A DNA stretch of 64,000 nucleotides, taken from the NCBI GenBank assembly GCA_000708835.1, contig DF237409.1, positions 1 through 64,000 of the forward strand, in the 5' to 3' direction. The number at the start of each line of letters is the position of its first letter. Position 1 is the stretch's first letter. Both the position numbers and the translations under genes were made by a program. The DNA comes from Klebsormidium nitens (taxonomy: Eukaryota > Plantae > Klebsormidiophyceae). The notes under the pieces were generated by a model. The model was not told where the DNA came from. It saw only the letters and a list, made by a program, of their open reading frames with translations, and did no database searches. Positions 26,462 through 52,800 of this stretch are shown here, in pieces.

Positions 26462-29400
26462 TTAGCGCACCATGCTCGCCAAAATCAGTGCACGAGCCAT
26501 GATATCGTTTGCCACAAAATCCTTCTCCGCTCTCCTCTCCTGCCGGCGCTTGTTCTTAGCCCTTTTCGCCGCTGTCCGCTCATAGCGTTCCACATAGGCT
26601 AGTCGGAAGCGCTCAGCAATTGGTACTAAACTAGCATCAGCAGACCTCTGAGTTTCTTCCAGGTCTTCCTTTTCGTTCCCTACCTGGTGTGCCCAACTTG
26701 CCGGATCAATGCCATCCAATAAGGGCCCATCTAAAGGCTCTTCCAATCGTGCATAGTATGGAAGATCTCGCCTCCGCTTTGGATTGACTGTAACTCGAGG
26801 AAACTCTCTTTCCAATCGGAGCAGAGACGCTTCGTCTACAGAAGGCTGCAAACAGAAGCAACTGTTTATTAGGAAATCGAGGCACACTTTACGTGGTCAC
26901 GAGATGGCTGGGTCGTATCGATATTGATGCATCGTAATCGTGGCCACCTGACATACACTCTAAGTTCTCACTGCAACAACACGTCTTGACTTTCAACTTC
27001 CACTGCCATTGCGGAGAGCAAGACCAGTTGAAGAGGAAATCAACGGTGGTGCCAATAATTACAGACCGCTTCAGTCGGCGCCGAGACGAATGCTTTCAGT
27101 TCGAATTTCATTTCTCGCCCAGCATAATAGCAGATCATTAGCAGATCCTCCATAGGAAACGAACGTCATTTTGAAAAAGCAGGCCAATACAAGCATCGCT
27201 GTAAACTGAATTCCGGCTTCGATAAGGATACTGAAGCTGGTTCAAATCTCTGATGAAGGACTTAGAAATCCGACATGTTCAGATTTGAACCAACCAGACC
27301 TTACACAGACACGTCAATCCAAGAATCACCTGCTTAGATCGCTTGAAGAAGCTAGAGTCTAGAGTGAGGCTTGACATCCGAATGACCCTCAGTTCGATCC
27401 AAAGGCGTCAAGACAGCTTTGCGAATATAGTAGCCTCTTCTCACCCAAATCAGCCAGTCCAACGCTCCCGCCCCCACGGCCACCTTGTCGACGTTCACCT
27501 CCTCCCAACTTGACGACTCCTCTGCTGACTGCAGCTGCGGTACCAGGTGCTTGATCGACCGCTGCGCCGTCCGGTTGCTAATGGCGTCCCCCCTGCTCTA
27601 GGAACCGTCGATCAGGGGAACGCCTAATGCGTGCGGTGTCTCTAGAAATCTCGAACGTTGAGGCTCGAGACGGAGACACAAACAGCGTGTCTTTGATTTG
27701 AGAAGCGGTACTACCAATTCGCATTAAGAAACCTGAAATAGCTGATGCGGACATACGCGCAAAGGAGACACGGTCGAGATAGGAATCATCAAGGGGTCTC
27801 TCCAGAATCTGTGCTTTTCAGAGCGCAACTTGAGCAAAGCGTTTTTGAACGACTCAAAGGCTGCAGCTTTCTGCTTCGGTTGTTGTAAGTTAACAGGAGA
27901 GACCTTGACGTAGCCTGGCGGGCGTCTAAAATGGCCCGTCGAAATGTGATAGTACGCGATCGCCAAGAAGGACAGAGACGCTCACCCTAGTCGTAACGTG
28001 TGAATCTCCGGACAGTGTCGGACGAGGGCCTCAATGCTTTTCGACGAGATGTTCGGACAGCACCTGCGGGGAAGAAGCGACATTATTGGAAAGGATTCCC
28101 AGCCCCGTTTGTTGCGAAAGCAGACGACTCTTACTGTCACAAAGGGCACAGCCGGCCCTTTGAACGGGTCTCTGCCTGAGATCGATACTTATGCTCGTTT
28201 CCTTGAGCTGCTGACGAAGTGTTGAAGGGCAGAGCATCTCTTTGAGCCTTTCTCATCAATCGAGAGCACAACATCAGACATCGAATGTGGCGCCGCTGGT
28301 TTCGAGTTGGTGTCCTGAATTCCTCCTCGAAACTAGCCCAAAACTGGTCCCCAGACCCATCGTTCGGCACAGATCAAGTATAGGTGGATACGCAAACGCT
28401 CCACAGTCGCTTGAACAAGTGCTCTTGGGTATAATGCGAACCACTTCTTTAACTCACAAACCATGTTAGACTGCCAGGACAACCACAGATTCTGATCCAA
28501 AAAGCGCCCTCATCAGTCAAAGATTTGACTAAAGCCTTGAACCTTGCAACCTTGGGCAAACTAACCTCAAACTAACCTCAAACTAACCTGATGTCCACGG
28601 CCCTCAAGCCTGGGCATGTCCTGGCGACTGCAGTGATGCCCTCAGCCGTCACCCCCGAACCTGATACATCCAAAATCTCGAAACTCTCGTCACACAGGGC
28701 CACCAGTATTTTATCGTTCAGGAGATTGCGTCGCCTGGCGATGGCGATGAGGGGGGCCTGCACCAAGACCAAGACACCTGATGTCAAACCACATGCATCG
28801 GAAATCTGTATTGAACTCCCCTTATCTGAAGGGCCCCTTGTGAGGAATAAAACACGAGGGCGAGTAGAACTTCGGTACACTGTAGAAAGATTTGGTCACT
28901 TAATTCTCAGAAGTTAGGCTGCGGGTATGGAGGAGGGGTGTCACAGCAGGGGTGCAAGAGCTCTTCGTCTCGGGCCATTGATCATGCTTCGAAGTGTTGC
29001 TGTAAGTGGTTTCATGCAAGTGCGCACATCCTCTACTTTTCCCACTGTCCATGCGCCAACAGACGCAAATTTCTAATGCAAGTGACCATCTCGCCTCCAG
29101 ATCATCAAGGAGCTGCCATCATTTCACTAATGTCGCGGCACACAAAAGTTGCTTTTGAGCCTGTGTTCGGGGCGCCAACTCAAGAACCTTCCTGGATTCG
29201 AGCACCTCGAAACTCTCAAAAGTTTCTAAACAGAAGGGCTCACCTTGGCATTTTGTGGCAGAATCCTCCCCAGGACCTCTACATCGTCCATCAGATCCTC
29301 CAAGCTGCTGCCCAGCAGCCCCAAACACAGATTCGACAGCCTGAACGGTCCCTTCGCCTGTTTCTCCGCTTCCAGAAACCCAGCCCTCCTGGCATTTGCC

Positions 29401-29711
29401 GCAAGGATCCCCCTCCCTAACGGCCCTGTCGCCTGCGCTTCTAGAAACGAAGCCTTGCGATGAAACGGAGTGGCTGTCTTATGCGAAGAAGTCCCCGTCT
29501 GATTGCTGCCCTCGCACCTGCTACTGCTTGCAGAGCGCCCGCTGCTATTTCTTTCCATGTCCAGGTCCAATAGCTCGTTCGCAAGAAGGTCCAGCTCGTA
29601 AGAATCGAGGTTCAAGTTTGCCAAAGCCCCGGGGGCGTCTTCAAGCCAAGCGACGTCTGAACTGGGCCCCAATGAGGGGTGGTGCCGGAGGCCGTGCCCA
29701 GCGCGCAACAT
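26462..29711 (-). CDS. RNI-like leucine-rich-repeat protein (similar, from memory, to Arabidopsis AT4G26980)
   Basis: Exons 29711-29244 (LSNLCLGLLGSSLEDLM..LPQNAK), 28757-28588 (APLIAIARRRNLL..EILDVSGS..LRAVDI), ~28064-27987 (CCPNIS..HCPEIHTLRL), ~27592-27454 (SWEEV..LDWLIW), ~26847-26462 (FPRVTVNP..IAERFRLAYVER..KRAKN..RRAEK). The start Met is uncertain. Confidence 0.85.
28558..28590. repeat. 11-bp unit AAACTAACCTC x3 spanning an intron 5' splice site
   Basis: On the minus strand it reads AG|GTTAGTTTGAG|GTTAGTTTGAG|GTTAGTTT. Confidence 0.9.
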
Positions 29712-30316
29712 GACAGCGCGCTGACGCCTCCGCTTCCGCCGCTGGGACAGAGCGTCCTCCGCACGATGTCAGAGATTGCCAAAGCCGAATGTCTTTCTAT
29801 CAGAAAGCACTTAGTAAAACGACTGAACGCTTTGAGGCGCCCAAAACTGACAGTGAGTGTCTGAAGACCTACGGTTCCAAGTGACTCTGCATCTGCTAGT
29901 GCAGGCTGTTGAGTTCAACTTCAGGAGAGTGTGTCACCTGCTTGCTGGAATCTGCCCAACTGAACTAGCTGAAGCAAGCTGTAGTTGGGTTCTGCACCTG
30001 GCCTCCACCTGAGGCTGAGGCGCATGGATGTGTTGAAAACCAATACCGTATCGGCAACGGAATCTAAGCCGTCGGATCCGAGTCCAGCGGGACTAGAGCG
30101 GGGCGAAAATCGTAACTGGTGTAGGGCAAATTTGTGCTTAGCGTAAGTTAAAGCAAACTTAGGGCTTGCCTCCATTTCATTGTTCAATTTGTAACATCTG
30201 CATTCTTGAGACGCTTCTTCTCCACCAGCCGCTCAATAAGCCGGAGCGTTTTGCTGAGATCACGGGCCGCCAGCATTGCACTGCAAAGTTGTTCCCTTGC
30301 ACCGCTGCTGCTCTAG

Positions 30317-31714
30317 ATGGCTTCCGAAACTGATGCTGAAGAAGACTTGATGGAAGGTGAGGGGAGCCTTGGGTTCAATTTGGTTTTCAGCGTTGTTGAT
30401 GATGATGCATGAGCTAAACTGGAAGACGTCACATAAATGTCTTGACAGCGGTCATTGGTATGTAAGACTTTCTTTAGCGATAGCCCCGCTTTTGCCAGAT
30501 TGCCAACAAAGTGGGTACAAGGTTTTGTGAAGGCTGCTTCATGAGCAGGGATCTTACAGTTTGAAGGCTGGCCCTGCAGCCTGCCCAGTTCCGATGAGCC
30601 ATACCCAACTTCAAAATCACTTGTCCAGGTCTTGATGCGGCCCGCGGCGCTGACGACGATGATTTGTACGGTGACTTGTACGCTGATGTTGGTCAGGGGA
30701 AGAAAGTCCTCAAGACCGAATTGCAAGAGGTGCAGAGACAACCGATTGGATTTGGAGAAGAAAGAGAACCTTTCTCTTACTGCAAAGAAGCAAATGTTTT
30801 TGCTTTATACCACTAGAAATCTCACAACCCAACGATCCGTTGATTGATTGCTGCTAGTCCATTTTGGCGTTGTTGGTCTGGCTTACAAAGCATCTGTCAC
30901 TGTTTGATATTTGATGTTTCATTGTTTGATGCTTGTCATTGTGATGATTCATTCTTCATTGTGGTGTGAAAGCTGATGCATCAAGTGATGCTTGGTAGAC
31001 GAGTTTTATTCAATCCCCTTTCTGGTGGTGTAACACTCCAGTTGGAGGAGAGGTATGAACGCAGCCAAGCTCAAGTACAGGAGTTGGAAGAAAAGGTGAA
31101 TCGTGTTTTCCTTGTATGCAATGACACTGAGGAGGCATGTCGCTCGAAGCTGCGCAACTCTTGTGAAGCAATCAGATGGTTCATCCGCTGCCAACAGCCA
31201 CCTTGTGAATTGAAAGTCCGCTTGCCAAGGGGAGATTGATGACGCATCTGAACAACTTCATGATTGTCGAGTGCCCTTGGGAACTGATCAGGGATATAAG
31301 ATGAAGGCATAGCACTTTTCTGAGACGTTGCGCTAGTTCTGATGGGTCTCCTTGCGCCCTGCGACAGACTGCAAAGCTTGAAAACGAACGAAGGATCCTC
31401 ATCAAAAACATATCCGCCCTTTTCAAAGTGAGTTCGGTTCACGCCTGCCACGCCTTTCTGCTGTGTTGTTTTGTATGCTCCTACTGCTGTCTGCAAATCC
31501 TCATTGCAGCATGAGCAAGCCTGACGTTCGTCTGATGGTTCTCAATCGACCGAATGATTGAGAGACATAGTGTCTCTTCCTGACCGTCGGATCCTCCCAG
31601 CTCACACGAATGCCCTCTTAACTAAGAAACGGCTGGGATTGTTTTCTGTTCCAGACCGCTCAGATGGAGGTTAAGCGAAAAGACGTGCAGATTAGCGAGC
31701 TTCGGCAAGAGTGA
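30317..31714 (+). CDS. Small (~104 aa) coiled-coil protein resembling the N-terminal domain of FLASH/CASP8AP2
   Basis: Five in-phase exons 30317-30356, 30629-30729, 31042-31095, 31368-31427, 31655-31714 give MASETDAEEDLMEGLDAARGADDDDLYGDLYADVGQGKKVLKTELQELEERYERSQAQVQELEEKTAKLENERRILIKNISALFKTAQMEVKRKDVQISELRQE*. The KNISALFKTA..E..RKD..I motif matches my recollection of the FLASH N-terminus. A GTGAG donor near the stop could add a further exon. Confidence 0.75.
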
Positions 31715-33553
31715 GGAACCTGCAGTCTTGAGATCTCCCAGTCTGATTACTCTCACTGCTGCAGATGGAAGTCTTGGGATGTTTGGCTTTCTCAGCGAGC
31801 TTCGACTTCAAAAACTTGCTGGTCTTTGAAACAAAGACGTTCTTTCCATTTGTCTGGTGGCTTCTATTCACAAACCATCAAACGCTGGACTTTGTTACAG
31901 ACCATCGCGCATGACCTTAATGTCTGGAAACCCCTTGCTTTAACCGTCCTGCCTAAAGTACTAGAGATGGACGCTAAAGGACACGTCAAATACCCCTTAG
32001 TAGTCGGCCCTTGTGTGCAGCATGGCAAAGGCGAGAGCTTACATTGAGTCGAGGCTGACCCGTCCAGCTTCTCGAGATAAGGAACGAGGGGGATCCGTCA
32101 AGCCCGAAAACCGAGGGGAGGTGAGGGTCAGTTCGGTTGATTTGGGACTCCCTTTCTGCTCCGTTCCCAGCCGCTTCTTTCTTTCCCTCTCTCTCTCGTT
32201 CCTATGTCGTTCCTCAACACCCATGATCGATGCAAGCGCGCTGCTTGTCATTCTTGAAGACCGAAATACAGGACAACGCATGTCGATTCAGCGCAGCGCT
32301 GATTGGTTTGGAAGGCCGTCTTAGCACCTTTTCAGATCATGGTTTCGGTTCGCTCGTTCAGTCGATATGACGGCCTAACTTCTTAAAGGTTGCTCGTTTC
32401 ACCGCGGAATCGAGTCTGGACTCTCTTGATGTCGTATCATCGTTGTTTACAAGTCGACGTGCGTTCTCGGAGGAAGCAAAAACCTCATAACCGGGGGTAG
32501 ACGTGCAAAACTAGATGCTGCAGAGGGTTGATCTTAGGCAGGGTAACGAAGAGATTCTTTTCAACGATCTGCAGAGGGAGCGGAGCCGGTCTGTGGACGT
32601 TGCTGGGGTTCGGCGGGCCAACGAGAGTCCTTCAGGAGAGCCGTCAAGGCATCGTCCCAGCCAAGGGCCGGACTCCTCGTCCCGTTTTCGAGATAGGCCC
32701 GGATAGGCACGCGAACTATGTCAGAACTAAGTTAAACACCAACTTCAAGTTCAAGATTCTGTACCCTGCGCAGCCGAGTGTCTCTGCAGTGAAACTTCCT
32801 GGACATTGCATAAAGTGCGGTATCGGCGTGTCCCGTATGGCCTGTACGGTGATCAAGAAGGTTTAGTGCCGAGGGTTGCTTGACCGCATTTTATGTGATG
32901 AAGACATGCAAAGAGTGCATTACACTTGCACGCATGAACATCAACGGTTTCGGCCCAATTCCATCCATCTATGTGAGATAGCTATATGTATATCTTAGGC
33001 GCCGCGGAAGACCTAGGATGTGCTACTGCGCATGGTTTTTCTCTGCTTGATTCATCTTAGCACGCGGATCGCTGCCCATGCGCAAAACTCTCAGTTGTAC
33101 GATCCGCAGAGGTGTGACCCAGCTCTATTACATGTACACACGTATACATGGAATCTGCATGACAACGTTGAGAAAGCGGCGTCGGCTCCCACATGCCGAC
33201 GCATGGAGCTTCAAAGCACTGCAAGCGCTTCACAGACCTAGGTGGCACGACTGTCCGACACATACATCTATTTGTAATTAATTAAATTGATAAATTAATT
33301 TGGGCGAGTCAAGATGGTCGTATGAGTTAGTGCTCAGCTTTATGCGGGACCAAAGTAGCACTGCACAACAGCACAGGTGAGATCGAAAGCCAGTCACTGA
33401 ATCGAAGAAAGACCTGTGAGACGTTACCAACGGCCAAGCTATTATTTACATGAATTCCCCCTCGGATAGTCAGAAGACCTAAAGCGATTCTATCCTACAG
33501 TATGGAGTTCGCTGTCGATAAGATTTGCTGATCCTTGCCAACCCCTATAAGTA

Positions 33554-36500
33554 CTACCTTGCTTTCGCATACTCCAGTCCAGTATCTAAGATAGCAGGCA
33601 GTTGCTTGAGCGAGCTCATTTGCGTATACAACATCGGCGTGCACCCCTGCGACATAGCTATGTCGCTTTGGCCGCCACTACTATAGCTACCCCACACCAA
33701 CCCCGTACCGCTCGCCTTTACCCCTTCCGTCATTTTAGTTGCCGCATTACTATCCGGTGTCCTTCCAACATCCATGCTTTTCGCGCCCATATGCGTATAC
33801 TCCTCCTCGTCACTTCGTTCTGCGTCCCCGTGATCGCCCCGCTCAGACGAACAGGTCTCCTGGAAGCCTTCGTCGTCGTCCTCTTCCTCTTCGTCCTCGT
33901 CTTGTGGCGCGCCTCGAGGCTTCCACTCGTTGTAATGTTGCTCCACGAATCTGCGCACAGCAACAGCTTTTGGTTACAGCACTACACAAAGCTTTCAGCG
34001 GAGCAACGAGGTGAGCTCTCTGGAGAGGGAGGGATCCGAAGAAAAACAGGAGAGAAAAGCGTCCCACGGTTCTCCGTGTCAGTCGTGTCTTGTGGATGAG
34101 CCGTTGAATCTGGCGGCTTCCAGACTCGAGCATGTTCCGATCGAGGGCAAGAGTTTCTCCAAAGCATCAACCAATGGGAAAGAGACGGACTACAGAGCAA
34201 CGCCAACAGGACAGAAGCAGCGGCAACAATTATCCACACCAAGATCCGGACGACGAGCTCAAGAACGGCAGCGGAACAGAAACGGAAGCAGAACGATATA
34301 GTGGGCGCTCACTTGAGGGACGCGGGCAGCAGGTAGGGATCGAACGGGAAGAACATGTCGAGCTTGTTGTGGCGCACCGCCCCCGGTCGCCCCTCGGACC
34401 GCTCGTTGCGCTGCAGGACGTCCGAGCAGTCTAGCAGGTCGAAAGCCGCGGCCTGGGCGCAAAACTCCTTCACGACCGCAGGCAAGCACACCTGTACGAG
34501 GAAGAAAGCCGAGAGTCAGAAGGAGTGTGGTACAATGGTCGTCACGTGAATCAGAACTCCAAGTACCATCTCTACGTTATCCTCGAGAAGGTCGGGCTGA
34601 TTTTGACTGCAATGAATGCGGTTGGGGGCGCATGAGAGAAGCACCGGACCCTGCAAACCTGCTTTTCAACAGGTCGGAATCCTCGCCCGACTCGCCTCCC
34701 AAAGCTTCACAACACGTAGGTCCTGAACAGCAGCAGCGACCGTTCGGATCCATCTGAGAGCCCTGGGCCCGCCCTAGACCACAATCTTGCAAGCGAACCA
34801 AGACTGTCGAATCCACTCTGCGTCGACAGCCCCTGACGCTGGACGTCCGAGCTTGTCAAGCGGTCTCCTCGCGTGACAGTGCGCGAGTTGGCATTTACGC
34901 CAACTTCACCGCAGTCTTGACGAGAACTGCGTTCATTGTGGGCTCACCTTCATTGGGTTCAACGCGTGGTGCACGATCTCGCGCAGCGGCATCTGTTGCA
35001 AGGCCTTGCTCAGCACGGGGTCCTTGCTGAGGGCCTCCATCCGGTAGCACAGAATGTAAAAGATGGCCTGCGGGAAACGATCGTTTGAATCAATACAAGG
35101 CCTTCGGAAGGGCAGGCTGTCGCACCCTCACCGCTACGGCCAGCTGCATGCCTAGAGCAGGATGTAAAGACTGCACCAAGTCGGGGGCCGTCAATCTTCA
35201 TGGTCTCTCCAATCTTTGCATACAAAGTTGGACATTGCGCCAAAGCAAAGAGCGGATAAAGACTAGGGCTTGAGTAAGAACGGAAATCTAAGGAGTGGAA
35301 GCGGACAGGCGTCGGCAACGACTTTTCACGATGGCGGGGCCACTCGGTTGCCAAAAAAACGCATATGTCGCTTTGTTACCTCTTGGGACGACTCTGTCCA
35401 TCGGGAGCTGCTGCTAGCACTTCACAATAGAAGTCTCTATCCCGTTCAAAATCAGGCTGTGCCACGCCAGAGAGGCTTGCCCAAGTGTGGGTAAGAATCA
35501 AATGCTTGACATCCTCCTAGCAGAATGTCCTTGAGGAAGGAGCTAAGCCCTCACCTGGCAGGCCGAGTAGAAGACGCCGTGCACGCCCGCGCCTGGCGGG
35601 AGACTGTCCGGGTTTGCCATAAGGAGGTCGCCGACGCGGGATGATGCCAGCATGCGGACGTACGAAACGGCCCAGTCCGAAAGCCTGCTCAAGAACGAGG
35701 CGAAGCCAAATGAGTGCGCCAATTAGTGAAAACCCGGAAAGGGGTTCCAGAGAACATTGGGTCCCGGTTGAAGGTGACGTGCGCCCCGTAGAACAACCGT
35801 CCGAATTGTGCTGCAGTCTGAGGCAGCGAGGAAACAAAACAGGGATACGACTGGCACAGCGCTGACGCAGTAGCGTCTGCAGAGGTTGCCGGGGACGAAG
35901 CTCGGCAAGCTACGCCGGACACAGTATCGGATACGCCTTGCGAACCTCAATACCATTCTGCGGAAGGTCGATTGAAGCGGTTCTCGGCAAGCAGCCGCTC
36001 ACCTTCGTAGGGAGCTTGACACGACTGAGAGGGGCACATAGTCGGCGCGGGCCAGGAAGCTGGCCAGATAAGCCGCTCCTGCCATCCTGCAATTTGCACA
36101 GCCGTTGTAACTCGTCAGTGTTTGTCCTTACGAGAATACCCAGATCCTCGAGGTTGAGCAGTGAGCTTGGTACAGAGAGGTTAGCGCTCTGTGAGATTTA
36201 AAGCCCTGCAACAGCCCTGCAACAGCGCGCTTTGAATTGACTTCTATTCGCAGACTCAAGGGCGTTCGCAGACTCAAGGGCGTCGCGAAACGAGACCCAC
36301 AAACGCCACGGGAGAATGAAAGGACGAGGAGACCGCGTAGAAGGGAAGGCCGAAGGCTTGCACAGAGGCTAGCTCAGTAAGATGCAGACATTGTCAGCAG
36401 CATCGAGAAAGAGAGCTTCTGCTTCGCAGACTCAACAATGTTGCAAACAAGACCCGACAAGAGTTCACCACAAGACGTAGACAGGAGTACGTAGAAGAGA

Positions 36501-39500
36501 CATACCAAAGCTTGCCAGGATTTAGGAAAACGCGGAAGCCTGACCTGGTTTTGTACGAGTTGGAGGGAGCGGCGACCGTGGCCACCAGGAGGTCTGCAAA
36601 GGCGGCACTTAACCGGGGAGGGTCCAGCGAGCACAGGTAGAACAGCAGGAACTGCAAGACAGCGAAGCAGCAATTACTATGGAGTGGACAAGCTGCCCCA
36701 TGGGTGCCGCTTCCTCTGACTCTCCTCTCAAGCCGTGGTAAAGAAAGGGATGAGGTTGCGAGGTTAGCAGCTGCAAATCAAAGAAAAATCTAGCAACCGG
36801 CGTTACGGGGCGTTCAAACAGATCAGTTAGAGCCCTGCACACAGTGTGGCGCTGGAGGTATACTTGGGCAAAAGAGCATGAAAAAGCTTTCATTCTTCTG
36901 ATGCTACCTTTCTCGTGCCCACGCGTGCCCAGTTGACAATGTTTTCAGCAACAACTGTGTTTCTCGGCTCTGGTTCCCCGCATAGAAATCAATGCACCCC
37001 AAAACCTTTTCTCGCTCCCCTTCGTTCCGCCTTTATGAGAATATCAGTGGATGAATAGCGACTGGCAGACGCGCGCAACAATCCTTCCAACCCTTTCCCT
37101 TCTCGTTCTCTCGGACTTGTCTAACCCTAAGCCTCCCTTCCAGTCTTCCCCTCACCTGCGTGAACTTGGATCGGTATGTATGTAGGATCGTCGTCTGGAA
37201 CGAGTGCAGCAGCGTCTCGAACGTCTCGTCGAGCCGACCGTGCGCCGCCTGCCGCTGCAGGTGCTCGAACGTGAGGCACATTAGCGCGTCCATCTTGTCC
37301 GCCGTTTCGTCTAGCGGGGGCGGCTCCTTGGTTCGCGCAGGCGGGTGCTGCAATCCGACACAGATCACAGACGTCAGGAAGTGCGCTTAGAATGTTGCTC
37401 GAGTGTAACTTGTAAGTGTCGCCTTAGTTTTGCCCAGGTGTTGCCTAAAGTTTTGCCTGACTGAACAAGGTGAAGCAGCAGAAGTATCTAAGAAGCCGTC
37501 TCGTCCGGGGGAGGGGGTTCCTTGGTCCGTACTAAGTGTGCTGCATCGTAAGAGAGGTCGTAAAAACTTGTATGGATAAGCAAGATATGAATCTCAGACG
37601 CCATCCCAATACAAGGCAACACAGACCACACATATCGTTTACAAGCAGTCTCTTTGGCCTGCATTGCAAAGCCCCAGCTGATGTCTTTCACACACCTTTC
37701 TGGAACAAGGTCTCTTAATCTCTGTGGCGTTTTCCTTTTTGCGACCAAGCTACCTCCAGGAACGGCTGCATGCCAGCCAGGAATCGCACCCGAGCAGAAG
37801 AGGAGAAACTGTACCTCTTTTCGCATAGCGTCGTCCCCGTGCTCGTCCAGGTCCACATCAAAGTGCAAATCGTCCTCGTCGTCTGAATCGGCCTCACGCT
37901 CCTTTTCCAGAATGTCCTCCCACTTGATCTCCACCTGAAGCCCATGCGAAACCCAAGTTCAGAGGTGAGATAGCGGTTCAAGTGTACAAACGAACGACGG
38001 TCACAAGAGTCTGATGCGGACGTCCGTCGCCAATGACTGCTGCTCTTTTGTGACGGTGCTTCTAGATGTCTCACCCCCACCGTCCATCTACTCTGCTGCC
38101 TGTCTACAAAATACTTTCCAGACAATAACAGAACCTCCTGGCAACGCTTTTCCCAAGAAATTAAGAACCATGAAGCATTCCTGGCCGCATGCGTGTTGTT
38201 GAAAGCAACTGCTTATTCTCAAAATCTTTAAAAAGTAACGTTTGCAGAAGCCGAGTGCTTAGGACTGACTATAAGCTCCGCCCGAAACAATCGGGTGACG
38301 GGACCACAAAACGGCTTACGTCGACTTCGATGAGGTGATCCACCACAGCAGTCAGAAGCTTGTCTCGAAGCAGATCCCCCTTCTTGCCGTCGGCCAGCCG
38401 AAACATGCTCTCCATGTAGTTGCCCTGAACCTGCAGGATACGAAGGACCACACTAAGCGGCTTGTTGCAGCCTGAGCTGTTCTACAGCAAGAAGAACACT
38501 TTCAAACTGCTGAGGTCAGTAGGCCTCGGGCTCTGCAGGACCTGCCTTGAAGGTGTTGCCGAATACAAAACCTGCTCCTGAGAGCCCTCCGTGGAAGTAT
38601 GGAGGGCACAAATTCGCAGAACCCTGACCTGAAACCTGCTAAACCTGGAAACTTCAGCAGGTGTTATCACACACCAGCGAAAAGGTGCCCCCAAATCCTC
38701 TAAAACTGCAACATGAACGATTCACGGCAGCTCACCTCTCGGTCCAGGCGCTTGTGCGGCATCCTCCGCAGCACAATCGGCTGCAGCCGAGACGTTGCAA
38801 TCGGCACCAGATCCATCAGCCGCTCCAGGGTCTTATGCACCGCCCCAAGCACCGCCTCTTTCCTCGCAACCTGCGCTTCCAGCACGTCTGACGTGACCCG
38901 CGCCCCTGGCTGGAGCGCGGGCGGGAGGAAGTTACGCACGAGCATGTCGAGGCAGAGGGGCAGGCAGCCCGCCGTGTTGGCAGACGCCTGTGGAGGGGGG
39001 TAAAGAAACATCAGTGTGGAGGGGGGCTAGAAAAGTTTACAGTGGAGCGCTGCAAACATTTGAAAAATTGCAAGAGCGAGTGATTGCTATAGATGATAAG
39101 GGGTGAACCAAGGAGAACAGGTTCTTGACAAGATCGAAATAATTTTTGTGTGCACACCGATCATCGCGGCCAAATTTTTGACTTCTTATCCGATCTTACA
39201 TAGGTTGCCCTTGAACTTCAAAAGATGCTCCTGGAGCTTGAAGTGAATACGAAAGGGGCAACCCTTCCAAGGCTTTCAGAGAAATCCCGCTCGCTTACTT
39301 CAACTGCCTTGCCAAGATGCAATCTCCCTTGAACTCCGCACATGCTGGGTGAACCATCTAACAATCGTCTGTTTAGGTTCACCGCGAAGGCCTTCTAAAC
39401 CACCAAGGCCCCAGAGTCTCTGATGAAACAGTGTGTGTTCCTTTCGATGCATGATGAAACAATGCCAGAGGATACACTGGGACACGATACACTGGGACAC

Positions 39501-40869
39501 TTCCGAGAAAAGTAAACAGAAACTCACCAGATTAATCGCAAAGTCCAGCAGTGCTGCGTTAGCCTCGTCTGCTGAGATCCATAGGCTGCCCCCGAAGACC
39601 TGCATCAAGGAACAGGAATCTTGAGCCCGATGCCAAAACGAAAAAGATCAGGCAACAACCACTTGCAACATTGCAGACACTGATTCACAAAAGCACAGGC
39701 GCAATGTCAGACAAGTACAATTGCTGCAGTCCTTTCCAACCAGCTTAGCTGCATCCTTGATTTGAATATCAACTCCAGATGATGATGAGAGATGATGAAT
39801 ATCAACTCCAGATGCACAGCACACACTGCTACTGAAGAATGAACACAGTAATCTTTTTTTTTTTCCAACAGACAGCCGATACCCAACCTTGTAACCTGTA
39901 CATTTTCAGTCCACCGAAAGTACTTTCCAGATCAACTGACACCCGCAGACTAACCCAATCCCTAGGAATGAGGAAGCTTGAGTCGGCAATGAAACCTCAC
40001 CTTCAGCAGGAGCGCCTCATGCGCACGCTCGTCCAAGTGGGACACGCTCTGAGACAGGACCTTCAAGACAGCCTGCAAATAGGTGATGGTAATAAGATGC
40101 GTCTTTGGCCAAGTGCTGACTTTCAAATGTAATATCTTATGAGGAATTTCAAAGAATGTTACGGAGCAGGAAACGATGGTGCTGAACACTCTCAGACTGG
40201 CAACGCACCACATGGTATCACATGCAATTAGTTTGCAAGCACACGCTGGTGACAAGCAACTTGATTTTCACACTCAACAATCCCTTGCAAAACCCTAAAA
40301 TGTCGATGTCAGAGTTTCGTGACAACTCACCACATCCTCCCGTATCTTTTCAGCCTCTCCAATCAGCTGGTTGTACTGGGTTGAGGGGCCCTACAGATCA
40401 AACACCAATCAGTGGTCGCATTTCTGCACAACCTGGACTACCAAGAGATTGGGCAATCGAGGCCTTCTCATCTGCCACCATGCAGATTGGAAGGCGTGCT
40501 TAATCCTCTTTTAAAGAGCTAAGATGACTCTAGTGCGTACTCTGTTTGATGTGGTGCCTCATCTAAGGTACTGCTACTCCAGCAACCTACAAACCATTAC
40601 CATATATACTCGCTCCATCGTACCCTAGTGGAACCAGGATATACTCCATCAAGCTGATCCTGGATTTCACGAAACTCCGCACAGCTATGAGAAGTATGTC
40701 CAATATGCAATTGGTATCCGTATAAATCAGGTATGTTGTCACGAAGCTGCACAAGAGGACTCACCTTCAATCTCTCTGAAAGTGCAGTCAATATCCACTG
40801 CCGGAGCAGCTTCGATCCTGCCTGCAATGGCAGAATTGTCCCGGACGCTGGAGGCATCTCCATCGCCAT
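33554..40869 (-). CDS. RRN3: RNA polymerase I transcription initiation factor RRN3, multi-exon
   Basis: Exons include ~40070-40000 (AVLKVLSQSVSHLD), ~39600-39530, ~38995-38735 (LVPIATSRL..RRMPHK), ~38430-38320 (LIEVD), ~37934-37815 (VEIKWEDI), ~37348-37166 (DKMD..HTYRSKFTQ), ~36655-36540 (FLLFYLC), ~36087-36002 (AYLASFLARA), ~35684-35555 (VFYSACQ), ~35072-34950 (AIFYILCYR..NPMK), ~34491-34312 (VCLPAVVKEF..FFPFDPYLL) and the acidic last exon to 33554. N-terminal exons are approximate. Confidence 0.92.
37488..37540 (-). pseudogene. Degenerate intronic copy of the start of the next RRN3 exon
   Basis: tgcag CACACTTAGTA CGG ACC AAG GAA CCC CCT CCC CCG GAC GAG ACG GCT TCT TAG, versus the true exon ttgcag CAC CCG CCT GCG CGA ACC AAG GAG CCG CCC CCG CTA GAC GAA ACG GCG about 190 bp downstream. 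Confidence 0.6.
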
Positions 40870-46808: not shown

Positions 46809-49800
46809 ATGAGGGCCAGCACTGCTTCCAAGGCGTTGCTCCTGCTGGCGCTCTTTGCGCTAGCCAGCGTGCATGGTGAGGTTCTTGTACCTGCTTCACT
46901 TTTGTTTCTTCTGTTTTTTGTCTTTCCTGCTAAGCTTTGAGCTTTCTCTGCAAAGCCCTGACCTTTTTGCTGGCTTTATCCTCTGTCTGCTCAGCCTCAT
47001 CACATTGGCGAACTTTACTTCTGCAAGTGAGGATAACATCAGCTGCTCCATGATGGCAGTATTCCTGAGGTATTTTCCAATCAGTTTCGGTCCTCAGAGC
47101 TCTTGCTGTGAGAAAGAAGTCACAACCTTGGGAGAGGAGCTTGGTTGCTGACATACAAACGTCGATCATTGTGCTGACCAAATTGAAGGCCTCTCTATGG
47201 TCAAATTCAGCTTCTTTCATTGTCATCCTTCTCTCAATCGTGGGATTCCTTTGATCTAGTTTGCCTAGAAGAAGATAAATGCGCTGCAGAAGGTCTTACA
47301 TCGATTGCAGAGTGTGTTTGCTTCGATTGATACAATCAGGTCTTGGGAGTACTGGCATGGGGCACTCATCACACATTTTTAAGCAATAGCTTCACACTTA
47401 GCAGACATCTGGAAAGTTTTGGTTGAGCAGGGTGAAAGTCAGGAAGGCTCAATTGCTCTCAACCAGATGAAAGCACTTCTACATAAGCTTTGGGGGAACC
47501 GTCTTCGCAGTATATCACAAGAAAGCCAAAGGGGGCCATTCTGAGGACATACATCAAGGTTCGCTGCTGCCAGAAGCTCCTACAGGAGCGTAAGCAAGTG
47601 GGGCAATGCATGACAGCTGCTAACGAGCCAGTCAAGCTGGGGCTGACGTTTCACTACTATGACTTTTTGCAGCCCAAATACAACGGGATGATGGCACCAA
47701 CCGACAAGGTGAGCACTCAGCCAGCTGCTGATCTGATCATAGATGATGATGTTTCCCATTGGCTGGTGTTTCTCTAAACTCTGTTGAACACCCCTATGAG
47801 ATCGCCACAGCAGATGAATATTCAGGTTCTGGAGTTATCTAGACTTTTAGGGCATGTTCTGAACAGTATCTGGCATCTCCTGTCTCTCAACCTGCACTTA
47901 GCCTATCCTGATTGATGCCCAGTTCTAATTGAGTTTATGTAATTTGACATAATCGGAGCACTTTTTTCTGGAATTATTCTTTACGTGTCTCATCAGACTC
48001 TTCAAGGCCTCTGCTCATTCCGATCTAGGACAGTGCTTACTGTGCTTAATCCCTCACTGTTCAACTCCCATCTATGGCCGCCCCCCTCAGCAAATCCAGC
48101 TCTATCAACCTCGTCTACTGTGCTCTGCTCACACCCTCGCTAACCCCACTCTTAATCCACTCCCCTAACCCTAGCTAACCTGGCTCCTAATCCCTGCAGA
48201 ACTGGAAGAAGAGAGCTCCGGCCAGTCCCGCAAGTTCCTGATGTCCAAGGCCCGCACCGCCGCGCTCGCTGCCGAGAAGAAGTGGAACGAAACTCACCAC
48301 CCAAAGACCGGCAAAGCCCCCGCCCCCGCTCCCGGCCCGGTTAAGGGTTCCATCAAGAACCCGACGACTACCAAGGACGGCCTAGCGGAAATCTCGGAGC
48401 TTACCGTGATTAACGTCGGCGCCGGGCTGGTTCCGTTTCCTGTGCCCAAGCCCGTCGGCGCGGGAGTCAACGGCAAGGGGAACAACGGCAAGGGAGCCCC
48501 CGCCCCCGCCCCGGTGGGGCGAGTCAGTGACATCAATATCACGCAGGTTGCGATGTGAGTGGCTTGACCTCAACTGGAGTAGAATCCTCAAGATTGTCTG
48601 CTGACGAATGCTCTTTTCAAAGAATCCTCAAAGTGATTTGTCGAGAGAGCGACGGTGAAGCTTGCAAAACGAGCTGAAAGCTTGAGAACTTTCAGTCAGA
48701 TTGTCTGAGCTGACAGCAAACAAACGAAGCATGTTTCCTTGCACGTCCTTCGACGTCGTCCGATTGCAGAAGACCGCGATTGACGCTTGAACTTCACAGA
48801 ATGTATACTCGAAGTCGCTTCGTCATCCTTTTCCTGGACACGTTTTCTCGTTGCTTCTTTGCGGTGTCTCGAGTGAAAATTCGAATAATTCTAACCATCA
48901 GTAACCAAAGGAACAAATTTTGCATCACTAATATAACTACACTGTGTTTGAGAAAGAAGAATGTCCTGAAGCTCAACGATGTCTGGCAATCTCTTGCAGT
49001 GTGGTCCAGAACGCGGGCGTGAAGGGCAGTCTGGCTGAGATCGAGGAGGCCATCAAAAACGGAACAGCGTCAGGAAACACGCTCGGGGCAGTCCTCCAGT
49101 CGCTCGTCCTGGGCGTCAACGCAACAGTCCCCAGCGGTGACGCTTTGGCAACCGGTGAGTGCTCGAAACTCTTGACATTTGAAAACAGGGGAAGAGCGAA
49201 TTTCTGGTTGTGGCAGCCTATCCTGAAACGACATGTTTCGTTTCTTAGTGTCTATGCGTACCCTAGCAAGAAGGCCGAAGGGGTTGTAGAAAAGGAGGCA
49301 GAAAGCAGAGCAAGCTCGCGGAATGGAACGATCTCAAAGCAGAATTCATTTAATTTTTCAAGAAGTCGATGTTGCAAATTTCTGAAGAAGTAGCTGTGCC
49401 GATGACACACTTTTTAAATGCGCTTCCATCCGTCCGTGACCCGCCTTCCGTTTCTCTTCCAACCGTTGAAACAACGATTAAAAGCAGCTCATATTAAGAA
49501 ACCCGTCTCACCAGCATGCAAGAAGAGCCAAAGCAGACGGGCACACGACTAAAACAATCTCGTTTCTTTCCCCCTTCAGGCTGCGTCTGTCCCTTCGTGT
49601 ACAACCCGGTGTGCTCAGAGGGCATCACCTTCTCCAACGCCTGCTTCGCGGGATGCGCCAACGCGACCAACGTCACAGACGGCGCCTGCGGTACGTTCCT
49701 ACTTCACAGCTTCTTACAGCGAATCCTCTGGGCAACGGGGCCGAGTTTCTGCCAACTGTTTCTCAGCTAGTAATAACGGCAGATTTGTTCCCTCTTTTGT

Positions 49801-52800
49801 GAGTAAACAGTTGAGTGCGCACTTCTCACACGCGCTTCGGTCAGCCTCCTCACGCTTGCATTCGTTTATTCGGCGCTGCTGCGCTTACCTTTCGACAGCC
49901 TTCGACCGTATCCGCAATTTCCCAGCTCCCTGCTTTCTCACTCCCGTTCTCGCATTCTGAACCCTTCCCCCTCCCTTTTACAGAAATAGCCACCCCCAAC
50001 CCTACCGCCCCGGCCCCTTGCGACCCCGTCCCGTCTCCCTCCCCGGTCCCGTCTCCCTCTCCTTCCCCCTCCCCCCTCTGCGAGGGCGGCAGCGAGACCC
50101 CCACTCCCGGGTCTCCCAGCACCCTGGGCGTCCAGGTTCCCAACGCCGCCAGCCCCCAGCCCTCCGCCTCCCCCTCCGCATCTCCCGAGCCCTCCCCTTC
50201 GTCCCCGGCTCTCCCCTCCGCCTCCCCGGTTCCGTCCCCCTCTAGTTCCCCGGCTGCCTCTCCCTCCGCCTCCCCCGAGCCCTCCCCTTCCTCGTCCCCC
50301 TCCCCTCTCCTTCCCCGGTCCCTTCCCCGTCGAGCTCCCCGTCCCCTCCCCTCCGCGGAGCCTTCCCTCCCCCTGCCTTCTGCTTCCCGGTTCCTCCCCT
50401 CCGCCGAGCCATCTTCGTCCCTCTGCCGTCAGCATCCCGCTTCCCTCCCCCTCTGCGGAGCCTTCCTCGTCTCCCGTCCCCTCCCCCTCCGCTCAGCCGT
50501 CGGCTTCTCCGGTCCCCTCCCCCTCTGCGGTGGCGTCTCCTTCCCCCCTCCCCAGCCCGAGCGCCGTTGCCAAGCCCCCCAGGGGCAGCAACCCCGGCGG
50601 CACCCCTCAGGGCAACCCCGTGACTGAGGCTCCCGCGCCAGGTAAGCGCTGCTTAAATTTGCGTGAACAATGGAACTCTTTGTGAGCGTGCAAGTCCGGA
50701 GCAGTCTTTCCGTACATAAACACACGAATCACACAGAAGTTGTGATTCGACTCGCTGCGATGCTTACGTAAGAGAGGGTAGTTCTGCTCGTATGGAGTCC
50801 GCTCTGCAGATTGACCCGATTACAAACAACAACTTCTGTTCTGCCGGGCTAACCGGAACACAGCACCTTCCATCTGCTTGATTTGTCGAAGCAAACTGCT
50901 GACCTGAGATTGTCGAATTCTGCAGCTCCTGGCTACCAGCCCCCGACCCGCGTCCCCAACCCCCCTCCCCCCCGCCCCACCAAGGGCGTCGTCTCCCCCG
51001 TCGACACCCCCGGCGAAGCCCCCGGCAGCGCGCCATCTGGCAGCCCCACCAACGCGCCAAGCGGCAGCCCCACCGACGCGCCAACTGGCAGCCCCACCGA
51101 CGCGCCAACTGGCACCCCCACTGACACGCCAAGCGGCAGCCCCACCGACGTGCCAGCTGGCAGCCCCGGGAACGCGCCAGCTGTTGCCCCGTCGCCCGTC
51201 GGCACCGACCGCCCCCAGCCGTGCCTGGATGCCAACAATACCCACACCCCCGCTGACGGCCCCGCGCCATTCTCCATGCCCGGATACGCCCTTCCCCCCA
51301 CAATGGCGAGCAACGGCCCCGCCCCCGCCCCGGGGGGTCCCAGCGCGGCTCCTTCCGGCTCCCCCACAGGCGCCCCCGCCCCCTTGAACAGCGTACCGTC
51401 GACTCCCGGGGGGGAGCCCACGAACGCCCCGACTTCGACTCCCACTGCCACCGACACCCCCTCAGGGACGAACACCCCCTCGGGAACGAACAGCCCCTCA
51501 GGAACAAACACCCCCACGGGCACTGACACCCCCTCAGGGACGAACACCCCCTCAGAAACCAAGACCCCCTCTAGCACTTCAACCCCCTCCAGCACCGACA
51601 CCCCCACAGGAACGAACACCCCCTCAGGAACCAACACCCCCTCTAGCACTTCAACCCCTTCCAGCACCAACACCCCCTCAGGGACGAACACCCCCTCGGG
51701 AACCAACACCCCCGCGGGCACTAACACCCCCTCAGGGACGAACACCCCCTCAGGAACAAACACCCCCTCTAGCACTTCAACCCCTTCCAGCACTGACACC
51801 CCTTCAAGCACTAACACCCCCTCCGGAACGAAGACCCCCTCAGGCACCGACACCCCCGCAGGAACCAACACCCCTTCCAGCACTTCGACCCCCTCCGGCA
51901 CCAACACCCCCTCAGGAACGAACACTCCCTCTAGCACTTCGACCCCCTCGGGAACGAACACCCCCTCAGGAACCAGCGCCCCATCTGGCACTTCGACCCC
52001 CTCTGGCACCGACACCCCCTCTGGAACAAACACCCCCTCGGGAACGAACACCCCCTCTGGCACTGACACCCCCTCAGGAACGGATACCCCCTCGGCAACG
52101 GGTACCCCCTCCGGCACCGACACCCCCTCTAGCACTTCGACTCCCTCAGGCACGAACACTCCCTCGGGCACGAACACCCCCTCAGGAACCAACACCCCCT
52201 CAGGCACTGACACCCCCTCAGGCACCAACACTCCCTCAGGAACCAACACCCCCTCAGGCACTGACACCCCCTCAGGCACCAACACCCCCTCAGGCACCAA
52301 CACCCCTTCAGGCACGAACACCCCNNNNNNNNNNNNNNNNNNNNACGGCACTCGACACCCCTCACGGCACCAACACCCCCTCAGGCACCAACACCCCTTC
52401 AGGCACGAACACCCCCTCCGGCACCACCGCTCCCCCCGCCAAGACCACGGCCCCCACCCCCCAGGCCACCAAGAACGGCCCCATCGGGAGCCCCCCCGAC
52501 TTCGGCTCCCCCGCCGGCGAGCCCACCAACTCGACCCTCGCGCCGGTCCCCACCAAAACCCCGACCGGCACCCACACCCCGACCGCGACCCCCAAGGCGA
52601 CTACGGTACCGAGCGCGACCACCAAGCCTGGTTCCAACACCCCGGGGTCTGTCACACCCGCTCCTGGTGCCACTACCCCCCCGGTAGCGACCCCCGGTTC
52701 GACCACCCCCGGCGCAACCCCGGTCACAACCCCGACCGTTACGATGGCCACCAGGCCCCCGGTTCAGACCCCCGGGCCGACTACTCCCGGCGCCACCGCC

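What the first reader, a model, noticed from the sequence alone, without database searches (positions are those of the whole stretch)
30317..31714. Stand-alone FLASH/CASP8AP2 N-terminal-like protein in a green-lineage genome
Seen: a five-exon ~104-aa protein, invisible as such in the ORF track, with acidic DDLYGDLY, a coiled coil and KNISALFKTAQMEVKRKDVQISEL. Established (recalled): the metazoan FLASH N-terminus has an LDLY motif and [21 protein letters not shown], binds Lsm11 of U7 snRNP and recruits the histone pre-mRNA cleavage complex. Land-plant histone mRNAs are polyadenylated, while stem-loop histone mRNAs are reported in some green algae. Inference: a minimal FLASH that may mark a U7-type histone 3'-processing system, or a repurposed remnant, in this lineage.
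Basis: partly seen in the sequence, partly recalled or inferred. Interest (0 to 1): 0.75.

Follow-up and report, generated by a model that had tools for sequence, protein, structure and literature searches.

The report
Small algal FLASH histone-processing adaptor gene
This is a real, expressed gene of the alga Klebsormidium nitens for a small (180, not 104, amino acids) relative of the animal protein FLASH; it keeps only the part that in animals links the U7 particle to the enzyme cutting histone messages, so that machinery probably works in this plant relative too, as recent surveys already suggest.

Summary
The protein does not stop at 31714, though. That TGA lies inside the donor site of a sixth intron (31710|31711). 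Spliced contigs in four runs from four studies join on to two more exons. The result is a 7-exon, 180-aa protein identical to the annotated Klebsormidium nitens KFL_004600060 ("hypothetical protein").

Homology to the FLASH/CASP8AP2 N-terminal domain is solid:
- The single sequence hits PDB 6AOZ at E 2e-7.
- A green-lineage-only profile hits it at E 5e-15; the next coiled coil is at 0.013.
- Both functional blocks are kept: DDLY aligns with LDLY, and KNISALFKTA..E..RKD aligns with the Lsm11-binding helix.

Short relatives (median about 115 aa) occur in green algae, Chara, moss, lycophyte, ferns, gymnosperms, brown algae, oomycetes, dictyostelids and animals. I saw none in angiosperms. This mirrors the published distribution of SLBP and tail-less histone mRNAs.

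A role in U7-type histone 3' processing is therefore likely but inferred. Lsm10/11, SLBP and U7 of this alga could not be tested here.

Novelty is modest. An October 2026 preprint reports FLASH widely outside animals, and a Trebouxia homologue is already named CASP8AP2. The scan had read this same stretch once before in another window (s1-285589), not on other DNA.

The parts
30195..32905 (+). Approximate transcript of the gene (KFL_004600060): 5' UTR from about 30195, 3' UTR to about 32905
   Evidence: Extent of spliced contigs in four runs. There is no ATG upstream of 30317 within the transcript.
30317..30356 (+). Exon 1 coding part (M1 to first base of G14), acidic N-terminus
   Evidence: Joint 30356|30629 is seen in all four runs.
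30629..30729 (+). Exon 2: acidic stretch with the DLY motif and the start of the long helix
30658..30681 (+). DDLYGDLY (residues 24-31). D25-L26-Y27 align with D56-L57-Y58 of the human LDLY motif that recruits the cleavage complex
   Evidence: Alignments. Y27 is invariant and D29 nearly invariant in 18 sequences from plants to insects. The role of LDLY/LDIY comes from PMC5636114 and PMC3884669.
31042..31095 (+). Exon 3 (residues 48-65), coiled-coil helix
31368..31427 (+). Exon 4 (residues 66-85). It ends with KNISALFK, the first half of the most conserved block
31655..31710 (+). Exon 5 (residues 86-103 plus two bases of codon 104): TAQMEVKRKDVQISELRQ, the second half of the conserved block. 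It corresponds to the human Lsm11-binding region 100-137
   Evidence: Joint 31710|32021 with GT..AG in all four runs. Invariant T86, A87, E90, R93, K94. Human L118/I119 correspond to L83/F84 (alignment; PMC5636114).
31711..32020 (+). Intron 5.
32021..32120 (+). Exon 6 (residues 104-137): the end of the long helix (to about residue 117), then a basic linker
   Evidence: AlphaFold2 predicts one helix over residues 34-117 with pLDDT above 90 across the exon 5/6 junction.
32575..32706 (+). Exon 7 coding part (residues 137-180) with stop TAG at 32704-32706. It encodes a disordered Arg/Ser/Gly/Pro-rich tail
   Evidence: Tail residues 118-180 have pI 11.4, 22% Arg and 17% Ser; pLDDT is 51-61.

Best explanation
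The gene encodes the Klebsormidium nitens orthologue of the FLASH (CASP8AP2) N-terminal domain, as a small stand-alone protein of 180 residues. Shown here: it is transcribed and spliced from seven exons. It has an acidic, disordered N-terminus carrying a DLY motif, one long helix (about residues 34-117), and a disordered Arg/Ser-rich tail. The second half of the helix carries the family's signature block, N-I-S-x-L-F-K-T-A-x-x-E-x-x-R-K-D. Inferred from the animal protein: two copies form a parallel coiled coil. The signature block binds the N-terminal extension of Lsm11 in a U7-type snRNP. The DLY motif then recruits the cleavage module (symplekin, CPSF73, CPSF100, CstF64), which cuts histone pre-mRNA just after its 3' stem-loop to give tail-less histone mRNA. 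The basic tail may help nuclear or nuclear-body targeting; that is a guess.
For: Gene model and expression:
- Six GT..AG joints appear in contigs of four runs from four studies.
- The resulting CDS is identical to KFL_004600060.

Homology:
- phmmer against PDB gives E 2.2e-7 to human FLASH NTD 6AOZ/6ANO over residues 25-102; the next hit is at 0.026.
- A profile built only from 11 green-lineage sequences gives E 4.7e-15; the next hit is at 0.013.
- The ESM Atlas's nearest clusters include 'C8AP2 protein (Fragment)' of chordates, at score 0.95 with 188 shared features.

Functional positions:
- Y27, L76, N79, I80, S81, T86, A87, E90, R93 and K94 are invariant from plants to coral and insects.
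- Human LDLY 55-58 is needed to bind the cleavage complex. Residues 100-139 bind Lsm11, and L118A/I119A abolishes that binding (PMC5636114, PMC3884669). These align with DDLY 24-27 and L83/F84.

Fold:
- AlphaFold2 predicts a single helix over 34-117 with pLDDT above 90, like the human 71-137 helix.

Pathway context:
- Histone stem-loops are reported downstream of K. nitens H2A, H2B and H4 (bioRxiv 10.64898/2026.10.14.759114).
- The same preprint reports LSM10/LSM11 in green algae and land plants.
- SLBP and poly(A)-less histone mRNAs occur in green algae, moss, the fern Adiantum capillus-veneris and cycads, but not in Selaginella or angiosperms (PMC13130582).
- The FLASH-NTD relatives I found are in chlorophytes, Chara, Mesotaenium, the moss Ceratodon, the lycophyte Diphasiastrum, the ferns Ceratopteris and Adiantum capillus-veneris, and the gymnosperms Cryptomeria and Taxus. 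None is from an angiosperm or Selaginella.
Against: - No Lsm10, Lsm11, SLBP or U7 snRNA of K. nitens was examined here. The tools gave no access to the rest of the genome or its proteome.
- The window itself holds no Rfam hit: no U7 and no histone stem-loop.
- The first Leu of LDLY is Asp in this protein and in most non-animal members.
- Dimerisation and binding are inferred, not modelled.
- The preprint describes K. nitens stem-loops as divergent: no loop uridine and none behind H3.
- Absence from angiosperms rests on named hits only.
Confidence: 0.62

Rival explanations
1. It is a true FLASH-NTD homologue but works in something other than U7-dependent histone pre-mRNA cleavage. It could be a general coiled-coil adaptor for 3'-end factors, or for a nuclear body or snRNP assembly, with the histone role an animal specialisation or lost here.
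For: No partner was tested in this alga. K. nitens stem-loops are described as divergent (bioRxiv 10.64898/2026.10.14.759114). An oomycete gene model joins the domain to PIH1D1, an R2TP subunit. The animal C-terminal and central regions (NPAT and Ars2 binding) are absent.
Against: The two blocks that are invariant across kingdoms are the two mapped to cleavage-complex recruitment and Lsm11 binding (PMC5636114). The taxa holding the protein match those holding SLBP and tail-less histone mRNA (PMC13130582). The oomycete fusion may be a merged gene model.
Confidence: 0.25
2. The functional product is the reader's 104-aa protein, made from transcripts that retain intron 5 and stop at TGA 31712-31714. 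The 180-aa form would be a by-product.
For: Unspliced contigs across 31681-32050 exist in all four runs at depth 7-18. Many relatives in other lineages are only 95-130 aa and end shortly after the conserved block, several from transcripts marked complete.
Against: The spliced joint 31710|32021 has higher depth (26-43) in every run. Every other intron shows the same unspliced background, so retention is not specific to intron 5. The predicted helix runs on at pLDDT above 90 to residue 117, into exon 6. Land-plant relatives also carry basic Arg/Ser-rich tails.
Confidence: 0.08
3. The resemblance is chance similarity between generic coiled coils and the protein is unrelated to FLASH.
For: Pfam and NCBIfam give only sub-threshold coiled-coil matches such as TMCO5, CENP-Q and SMC. 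Foldseek finds nothing for the single-helix model.
Against: Twelve orders of magnitude separate FLASH from the best other coiled coil in the profile search. There are ten invariant positions, including non-heptad polar residues (N79, S81, T86, R93, K94), and an invariant Tyr outside the helix. Pfam has no FLASH-NTD model, so its silence is uninformative.
Confidence: 0.02

Closest known systems
Human FLASH / CASP8AP2 N-terminal domain (residues 51-137; PDB 6ANO, 6AOZ, 6AP0)
   Same: A DLY motif sits in a flexible acidic segment, followed by one long helix that carries KNISAL-x-KTA-x-x-E-x-x-RKD. The alignment covers residues 25-102 against human 56-137. A single long helix is predicted.
   Different: Human FLASH has 1982 residues, with a central Ars2-binding region and a C-terminal SANT/Myb-like NPAT-binding domain (PMC5636114, PMC7432317). 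The algal protein has 180 residues and only a 63-residue Arg/Ser-rich tail. Its motif reads DDLY where human has LDLY, and L83-F84 where human has L118-I119. The coiled coil upstream of the block is 7 residues shorter (gap).
Drosophila FLASH (844 aa; LDIY motif 71-74; Lsm11-binding site in the first 178 residues)
   Same: The N-terminal 178 residues alone restore processing in depleted extracts (PMC3884669). A protein the size of the algal one can therefore in principle do the processing job. The insect relatives found here share the same block.
   Different: The fly protein has a long C-terminal part used for histone locus body localisation. The algal one has none.
Short FLASH-NTD proteins of other non-animal eukaryotes (e.g. 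Trebouxia sp. KAL3142590.1, named 'CASP8 associated protein 2'; Chara braunii GBG60583.1; Tieghemostelium lacteum KYR00547.1; brown algae; oomycetes)
   Same: Same architecture and motifs. Median length is about 115 aa among 204 motif-bearing proteins fetched.
   Different: K. nitens and land plants add a basic low-complexity tail (total length 180 to about 390 aa) that most protist members lack.
YARP / GON4L
   Same: It is the other known FLASH-related protein of animals.
   Different: It shares FLASH's C-terminal SANT/Myb-like domain, not the N-terminal domain (PMC7432317). There is no resemblance to the algal protein, which lacks that domain.

Membership tests
FLASH (CASP8AP2) N-terminal domain family | Significant sequence similarity to the FLASH NTD, clearly above generic coiled coils | tested here: met
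   phmmer gives E 2.2e-7. The green-only profile gives E 4.7e-15 against 0.013 for the next chain. The Atlas nearest clusters include chordate C8AP2.
FLASH (CASP8AP2) N-terminal domain family | LDLY/LDIY-type motif in a flexible segment N-terminal to the helix (recruits the histone cleavage complex) | tested here: met
   D25-L26-Y27 of DDLY 24-27 align with D56-L57-Y58 of the human LDLY motif. Y27 is invariant in 18 and in 30 sequences. The first Leu is Asp here. Function of the motif was not tested.
FLASH (CASP8AP2) N-terminal domain family | Conserved Lsm11-binding block in the C-terminal half of the helix (human 100-137, including L118/I119) | tested here: met
   The block is KNISALFKTAQMEVKRKD (residues 78-95). 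N79, I80, S81, T86, A87, E90, R93 and K94 are invariant. L83/F84 are at the positions of L118/I119 (PMC5636114).
FLASH (CASP8AP2) N-terminal domain family | Long continuous helix able to form a parallel coiled-coil dimer | tested here: inconclusive
   The AlphaFold2 monomer shows one helix over 34-117 with pLDDT above 90. Dimerisation was not modelled, and Foldseek found no match for a single helix.
FLASH (CASP8AP2) N-terminal domain family | Physical partner present: Lsm11 (with Lsm10 and U7 snRNA) in the same genome, and binding to it | not testable with these tools
   Only this 64-kb window of the genome was readable, and it has no Rfam hit. The preprint reports LSM10/11 in green algae and land plants in general.
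FLASH (CASP8AP2) N-terminal domain family | Required for cleavage of histone pre-mRNA after the stem-loop | not testable with these tools
   This needs genetics or biochemistry. Stem-loops in K. nitens histone genes are reported by the preprint and by scan notes s1-285465 and s1-299485, which were not re-tested here.
Full-length metazoan FLASH architecture | Central Ars2-binding region and C-terminal SANT/Myb-like NPAT-binding domain | tested here: not met
   The protein ends at residue 180 with a low-complexity tail. No Pfam domain was found in it or in its plant relatives. It is therefore not filed as a full-length FLASH, only as an NTD-only orthologue.

The most novel reading that the evidence does not exclude
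FLASH began as a stand-alone adaptor of about 100 aa (DLY motif plus Lsm11-binding coiled coil) that was already present in the common ancestor of plants, stramenopiles, amoebozoans and animals. The 'huge' animal protein would be a later accretion. Plants kept the small form wherever SLBP and tail-less histone mRNAs persist, and lost it together with them in angiosperms. On this reading K. nitens runs a complete RNA-guided U7-type cleavage system, and a still undescribed plant U7 snRNA awaits discovery.
Probability: 0.45. Interest if true: 0.6.

Novelty: new member of a known kind. Interest (0 to 1): 0.42.

Why it matters
The U7 snRNP route that makes tail-less histone mRNAs was long treated as an animal speciality. 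Two 2026 studies show that stem-loops and SLBP survive in algae, mosses, ferns and some gymnosperms. One covers only SLBP. The other mentions FLASH outside animals only in general terms. This gene gives a concrete, expressed streptophyte FLASH that keeps both functional motifs in a very small protein. Its relatives' distribution tracks SLBP. That makes the plant pathway testable through binding to Lsm11, mutants of the DLY motif and of L83/F84, and knock-outs in tractable algae or moss. It also points to where a plant U7 snRNA should be sought. In addition it corrects the gene model: 180 aa, not 104.

Tried and rejected
- Pfam and NCBIfam scans gave only sub-threshold coiled-coil noise (TMCO5, CENP-Q, SMC and others). 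Pfam has no FLASH-NTD model, so this says nothing either way.
- Foldseek of the AlphaFold2 model against PDB returned no match, as expected for one long helix.
- Rfam at gathering thresholds found nothing in the 64-kb window, so neither a U7 gene nor a histone stem-loop lies nearby.
- The search for angiosperm relatives was blank in three searches. The first was an exhaustive phmmer with the algal NTD. The second was a word search with the Cryptomeria NTD for proteins of 196-623 aa. The third was a green-lineage profile for proteins of 60-192 aa. Clustering of unnamed hits showed only a few moss- or lycophyte-like fragments.
- I could not search K. nitens for Lsm10, Lsm11, SLBP or U7.
- Gene neighbourhood is uninformative: an abhydrolase, an unknown 415-aa protein, RRN3 and a NIPA transporter.

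Full report
**What is in the sequence**

All have GT..AG borders. Together they read in frame to a 104-aa string that contains DDLYGDLY and KNISALFKTAQMEVKRKDVQISEL.

**The gene model needs correction**

- A word search of the 104-aa string found one near-identical protein, KFL_004600060 of Klebsormidium nitens. It is 180 aa and named "hypothetical protein". It matches through ...SELRQ and then continues.
- I laid the assembled contigs of four public runs from four different studies on 30100-33100. All four show the same six GT..AG joints: 30356|30629, 30729|31042, 31095|31368, 31427|31655, 31710|32021 and 32120|32575.
- The joint across intron 5 has contig depth 26-43. The unspliced contig over the same place has 7-18. 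Every other intron shows a similar unspliced background, so intron 5 is not specially retained.
- Joining the seven exons gives a 543-nt CDS ending in TAG at 32704-32706. Its translation is identical to KFL_004600060.
- The ATG at 30317 is the first in the transcript, which runs from about 30195 to about 32905.
- The window is DF237409.1:1-64000 of assembly GCA_000708835.1.
- The same stretch had been read once before by this scan in another window, with the end at 32706 (s1-285589). My result agrees with that end.

**Is it FLASH?**

- Pfam and NCBIfam give only sub-threshold coiled-coil matches. Pfam has no model of this domain.
- phmmer against all PDB sequences puts the human CASP8AP2/FLASH N-terminal domain (6AOZ, 6ANO) first. 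The E-value is 2.2e-7 over residues 25-102, with the next chain at 0.026.
- An exhaustive phmmer of residues 1-103 against 1.84 billion representatives found 106 proteins at E <= 1e-3. Nearly all have the same layout at their N-terminus: an acidic stretch, D-[LI]-Y-G-D-L, a coiled coil, then [RK]-N-I-S-[CAS]-L-F-K-T-A-x-x-E-x-x-R-K-D.
- A profile built only from 11 green-lineage members hits human FLASH NTD at E 4.7e-15, with the next chain at 0.013.
- In an 18-sequence alignment from streptophytes, chlorophytes, a dictyostelid, a coral and insects, ten positions are invariant: Y27, L76, N79, I80, S81, T86, A87, E90, R93 and K94.
- The ESM Atlas independently places the protein next to a chordate cluster named "C8AP2 protein (Fragment)" and next to oomycete and arthropod clusters.
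- Chance resemblance between coiled coils is therefore excluded.

**Do the conserved parts correspond to function?**

- In human FLASH, LDLY (55-58) is essential for binding the histone cleavage complex.
- Residues 100-139 bind Lsm11, and L118A/I119A abolishes that binding without breaking the dimer.
- Residues 71-137 form a parallel coiled-coil dimer (PMC5636114).
- The Drosophila LDIY motif does the same job as LDLY, and the first 178 residues of fly FLASH restore processing in depleted extract (PMC3884669).
- By the alignments, D56-L57-Y58 of human LDLY correspond to D25-L26-Y27, within DDLY 24-27. Human L118/I119 correspond to L83/F84, and K129/D130 to K94/D95.
- The two segments that are invariant across kingdoms are therefore the two that have mapped functions in animals.
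- AlphaFold2, run with a 30-sequence alignment, predicts one helix over 34-117 at pLDDT above 90. The first 33 residues and residues 118-180 are disordered. The helix runs across the exon 5/6 junction, which fits the 180-aa model better than the 104-aa one.
- The tail is basic (pI 11.4, 22% Arg, 17% Ser).
- Foldseek found no PDB match for this single-helix model, which is uninformative.

**Architecture and distribution**

- Named relatives occur in many chlorophytes: Trebouxia, Cymbomonas, Coccomyxa, Tetraselmis, Pyramimonas, Apatococcus, Nannochloris, Picochlorum, Astrephomene and Tetrabaena.
- Among streptophytes they occur in Chara braunii, Mesotaenium, the moss Ceratodon, the lycophyte Diphasiastrum, the ferns Ceratopteris and Adiantum, and the gymnosperms Cryptomeria and Taxus.
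- Outside plants they occur in brown algae, oomycetes, a chrysophyte, dictyostelids and Ichthyophonus.
- In animals they occur in a sponge, a coral and insects; the insect proteins are 911-1108 aa.
- Of 227 proteins fetched, 204 carry the motif, and their median length is about 115 aa. Several come from transcripts marked complete.
- Streptophyte members add a low-complexity Arg/Ser/Asp/His-rich tail, for a total of 180-393 aa. None has a recognisable second domain.
It appears to be the usual form outside animals.
- I saw no angiosperm or Selaginella protein in three searches: the exhaustive search, the Cryptomeria-NTD search for proteins of 196-623 aa and the best 120 hits of the profile search for 60-192 aa. 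Unnamed hits that cluster with land plants are a few moss- or lycophyte-like fragments.

**Pathway**

I could not examine Lsm10, Lsm11, SLBP, U7 or the histone genes of K. nitens directly. The window itself has no Rfam hit. The literature gives three relevant points:
- The preprint by Zhao, Bond and Ni Leathlobhair (bioRxiv 10.64898/2026.10.14.759114) reports stem-loops downstream of K. nitens H2A, H2B and H4. It describes them as divergent, with none behind H3.
- The same preprint reports LSM10 and LSM11 in green algae and land plants, and FLASH "detected widely outside metazoans" using a PANTHER profile. It gives no detail for this species and none on architecture.
- A Genome Biology paper (PMC13130582) shows poly(A)-less histone mRNAs and SLBP in green algae, Physcomitrium, Adiantum capillus-veneris and cycads. 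It finds SLBP lost in Selaginella and in angiosperms, and does not mention FLASH, Lsm11 or U7.

The taxa in which I found FLASH-NTD proteins match that pattern, down to Adiantum capillus-veneris. That is circumstantial support for a shared pathway. Earlier notes of this scan report histone stem-loops (s1-285465, s1-299485), a conserved downstream element (s1-299486) and an SLBP gene (s1-324396) elsewhere in this genome. I treat these as leads, since I did not test them.

**Mechanism proposed**

Shown: the gene is expressed and spliced. The protein is a FLASH-NTD homologue, both functional blocks are conserved, and a long helix is predicted.

Inferred: it forms a parallel dimer. The dimer binds the Lsm11 N-terminus in a 2:1 complex through the N-I-S..T-A..E..R-K block. 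It presents the DLY segment to symplekin/CPSF73/CPSF100/CstF64, so that a U7-type particle cleaves histone pre-mRNA after the stem-loop.

I put about 0.9 on the homology and about 0.6 on this function. The main rival (0.25) is a conserved adaptor used for some other nuclear task. The 104-aa isoform as the main product is unlikely (0.08). Chance similarity is effectively excluded.

**Novelty and score**

The K. nitens protein is unnamed in the databases, and the FLASH component of the plant pathway is not treated in the 2026 Genome Biology paper. However, the 2026 preprint already states that FLASH occurs widely outside animals, and one Trebouxia homologue is already named "CASP8 associated protein 2" in GenBank. 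The finding is therefore a new member of a known kind.

Three observations may add to what is published:
- The NTD-only architecture is the norm outside animals.
- Streptophytes add a basic tail.
- The distribution appears to follow SLBP, including loss in angiosperms.

Interest is 0.42.

Noticed in passing
P0071 (Aphanomyces astaci RHZ11524.1, 641 aa), not in the window: An oomycete gene model joins a FLASH-NTD (residues 4-83) to a complete PIH1D1 (PIH1 N-terminal and CS domains, E 4e-30 and 6e-18). PIH1D1 is an R2TP co-chaperone subunit used in RNP assembly. This may be a real fusion or two merged neighbouring genes.
   Followed up: partly
window 48001-56000: This region has raised G+C (0.56-0.60) and strong negative GC skew (-0.15 to -0.28) compared with the rest of the window. 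It overlaps another scan note on a mucin-like Pro/Thr/Ser-rich secreted protein (s1-285539).
   Followed up: no
window 30100-33100: Every one of the six introns is also represented by an unspliced contig, at roughly a quarter to a half of the depth of the spliced form, in all four runs. These could be pre-mRNA, DNA carry-over or widespread intron retention; I cannot tell which.
   Followed up: no
window 33238-40553 (minus strand) and 26462-29711 (minus strand): The neighbours are an RRN3 (RNA polymerase I factor) gene downstream and an unannotated 415-aa protein without Pfam hits upstream. There is no functional link to histone processing. The window also holds 20 N.
   Followed up: no
Metagenome relatives P0121, P0160, P0167, P0173, P0209, P0220, P0227: Short FLASH-NTD-like proteins from metagenomes carry misleading automatic names: 'ZapB', 'CHASE3 domain sensor', 'RNase H-like nuclease (RuvC/YqgF)' and 'septal ring factor EnvC'. 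They are eukaryotic coiled-coil proteins misnamed by prokaryote pipelines.
   Followed up: no
P0009 (6907 aa), P0103, P0106: A few long proteins hit the query in several stretches and lack the signature motif. They are probably generic coiled-coil false positives near the E-value threshold.
   Followed up: no
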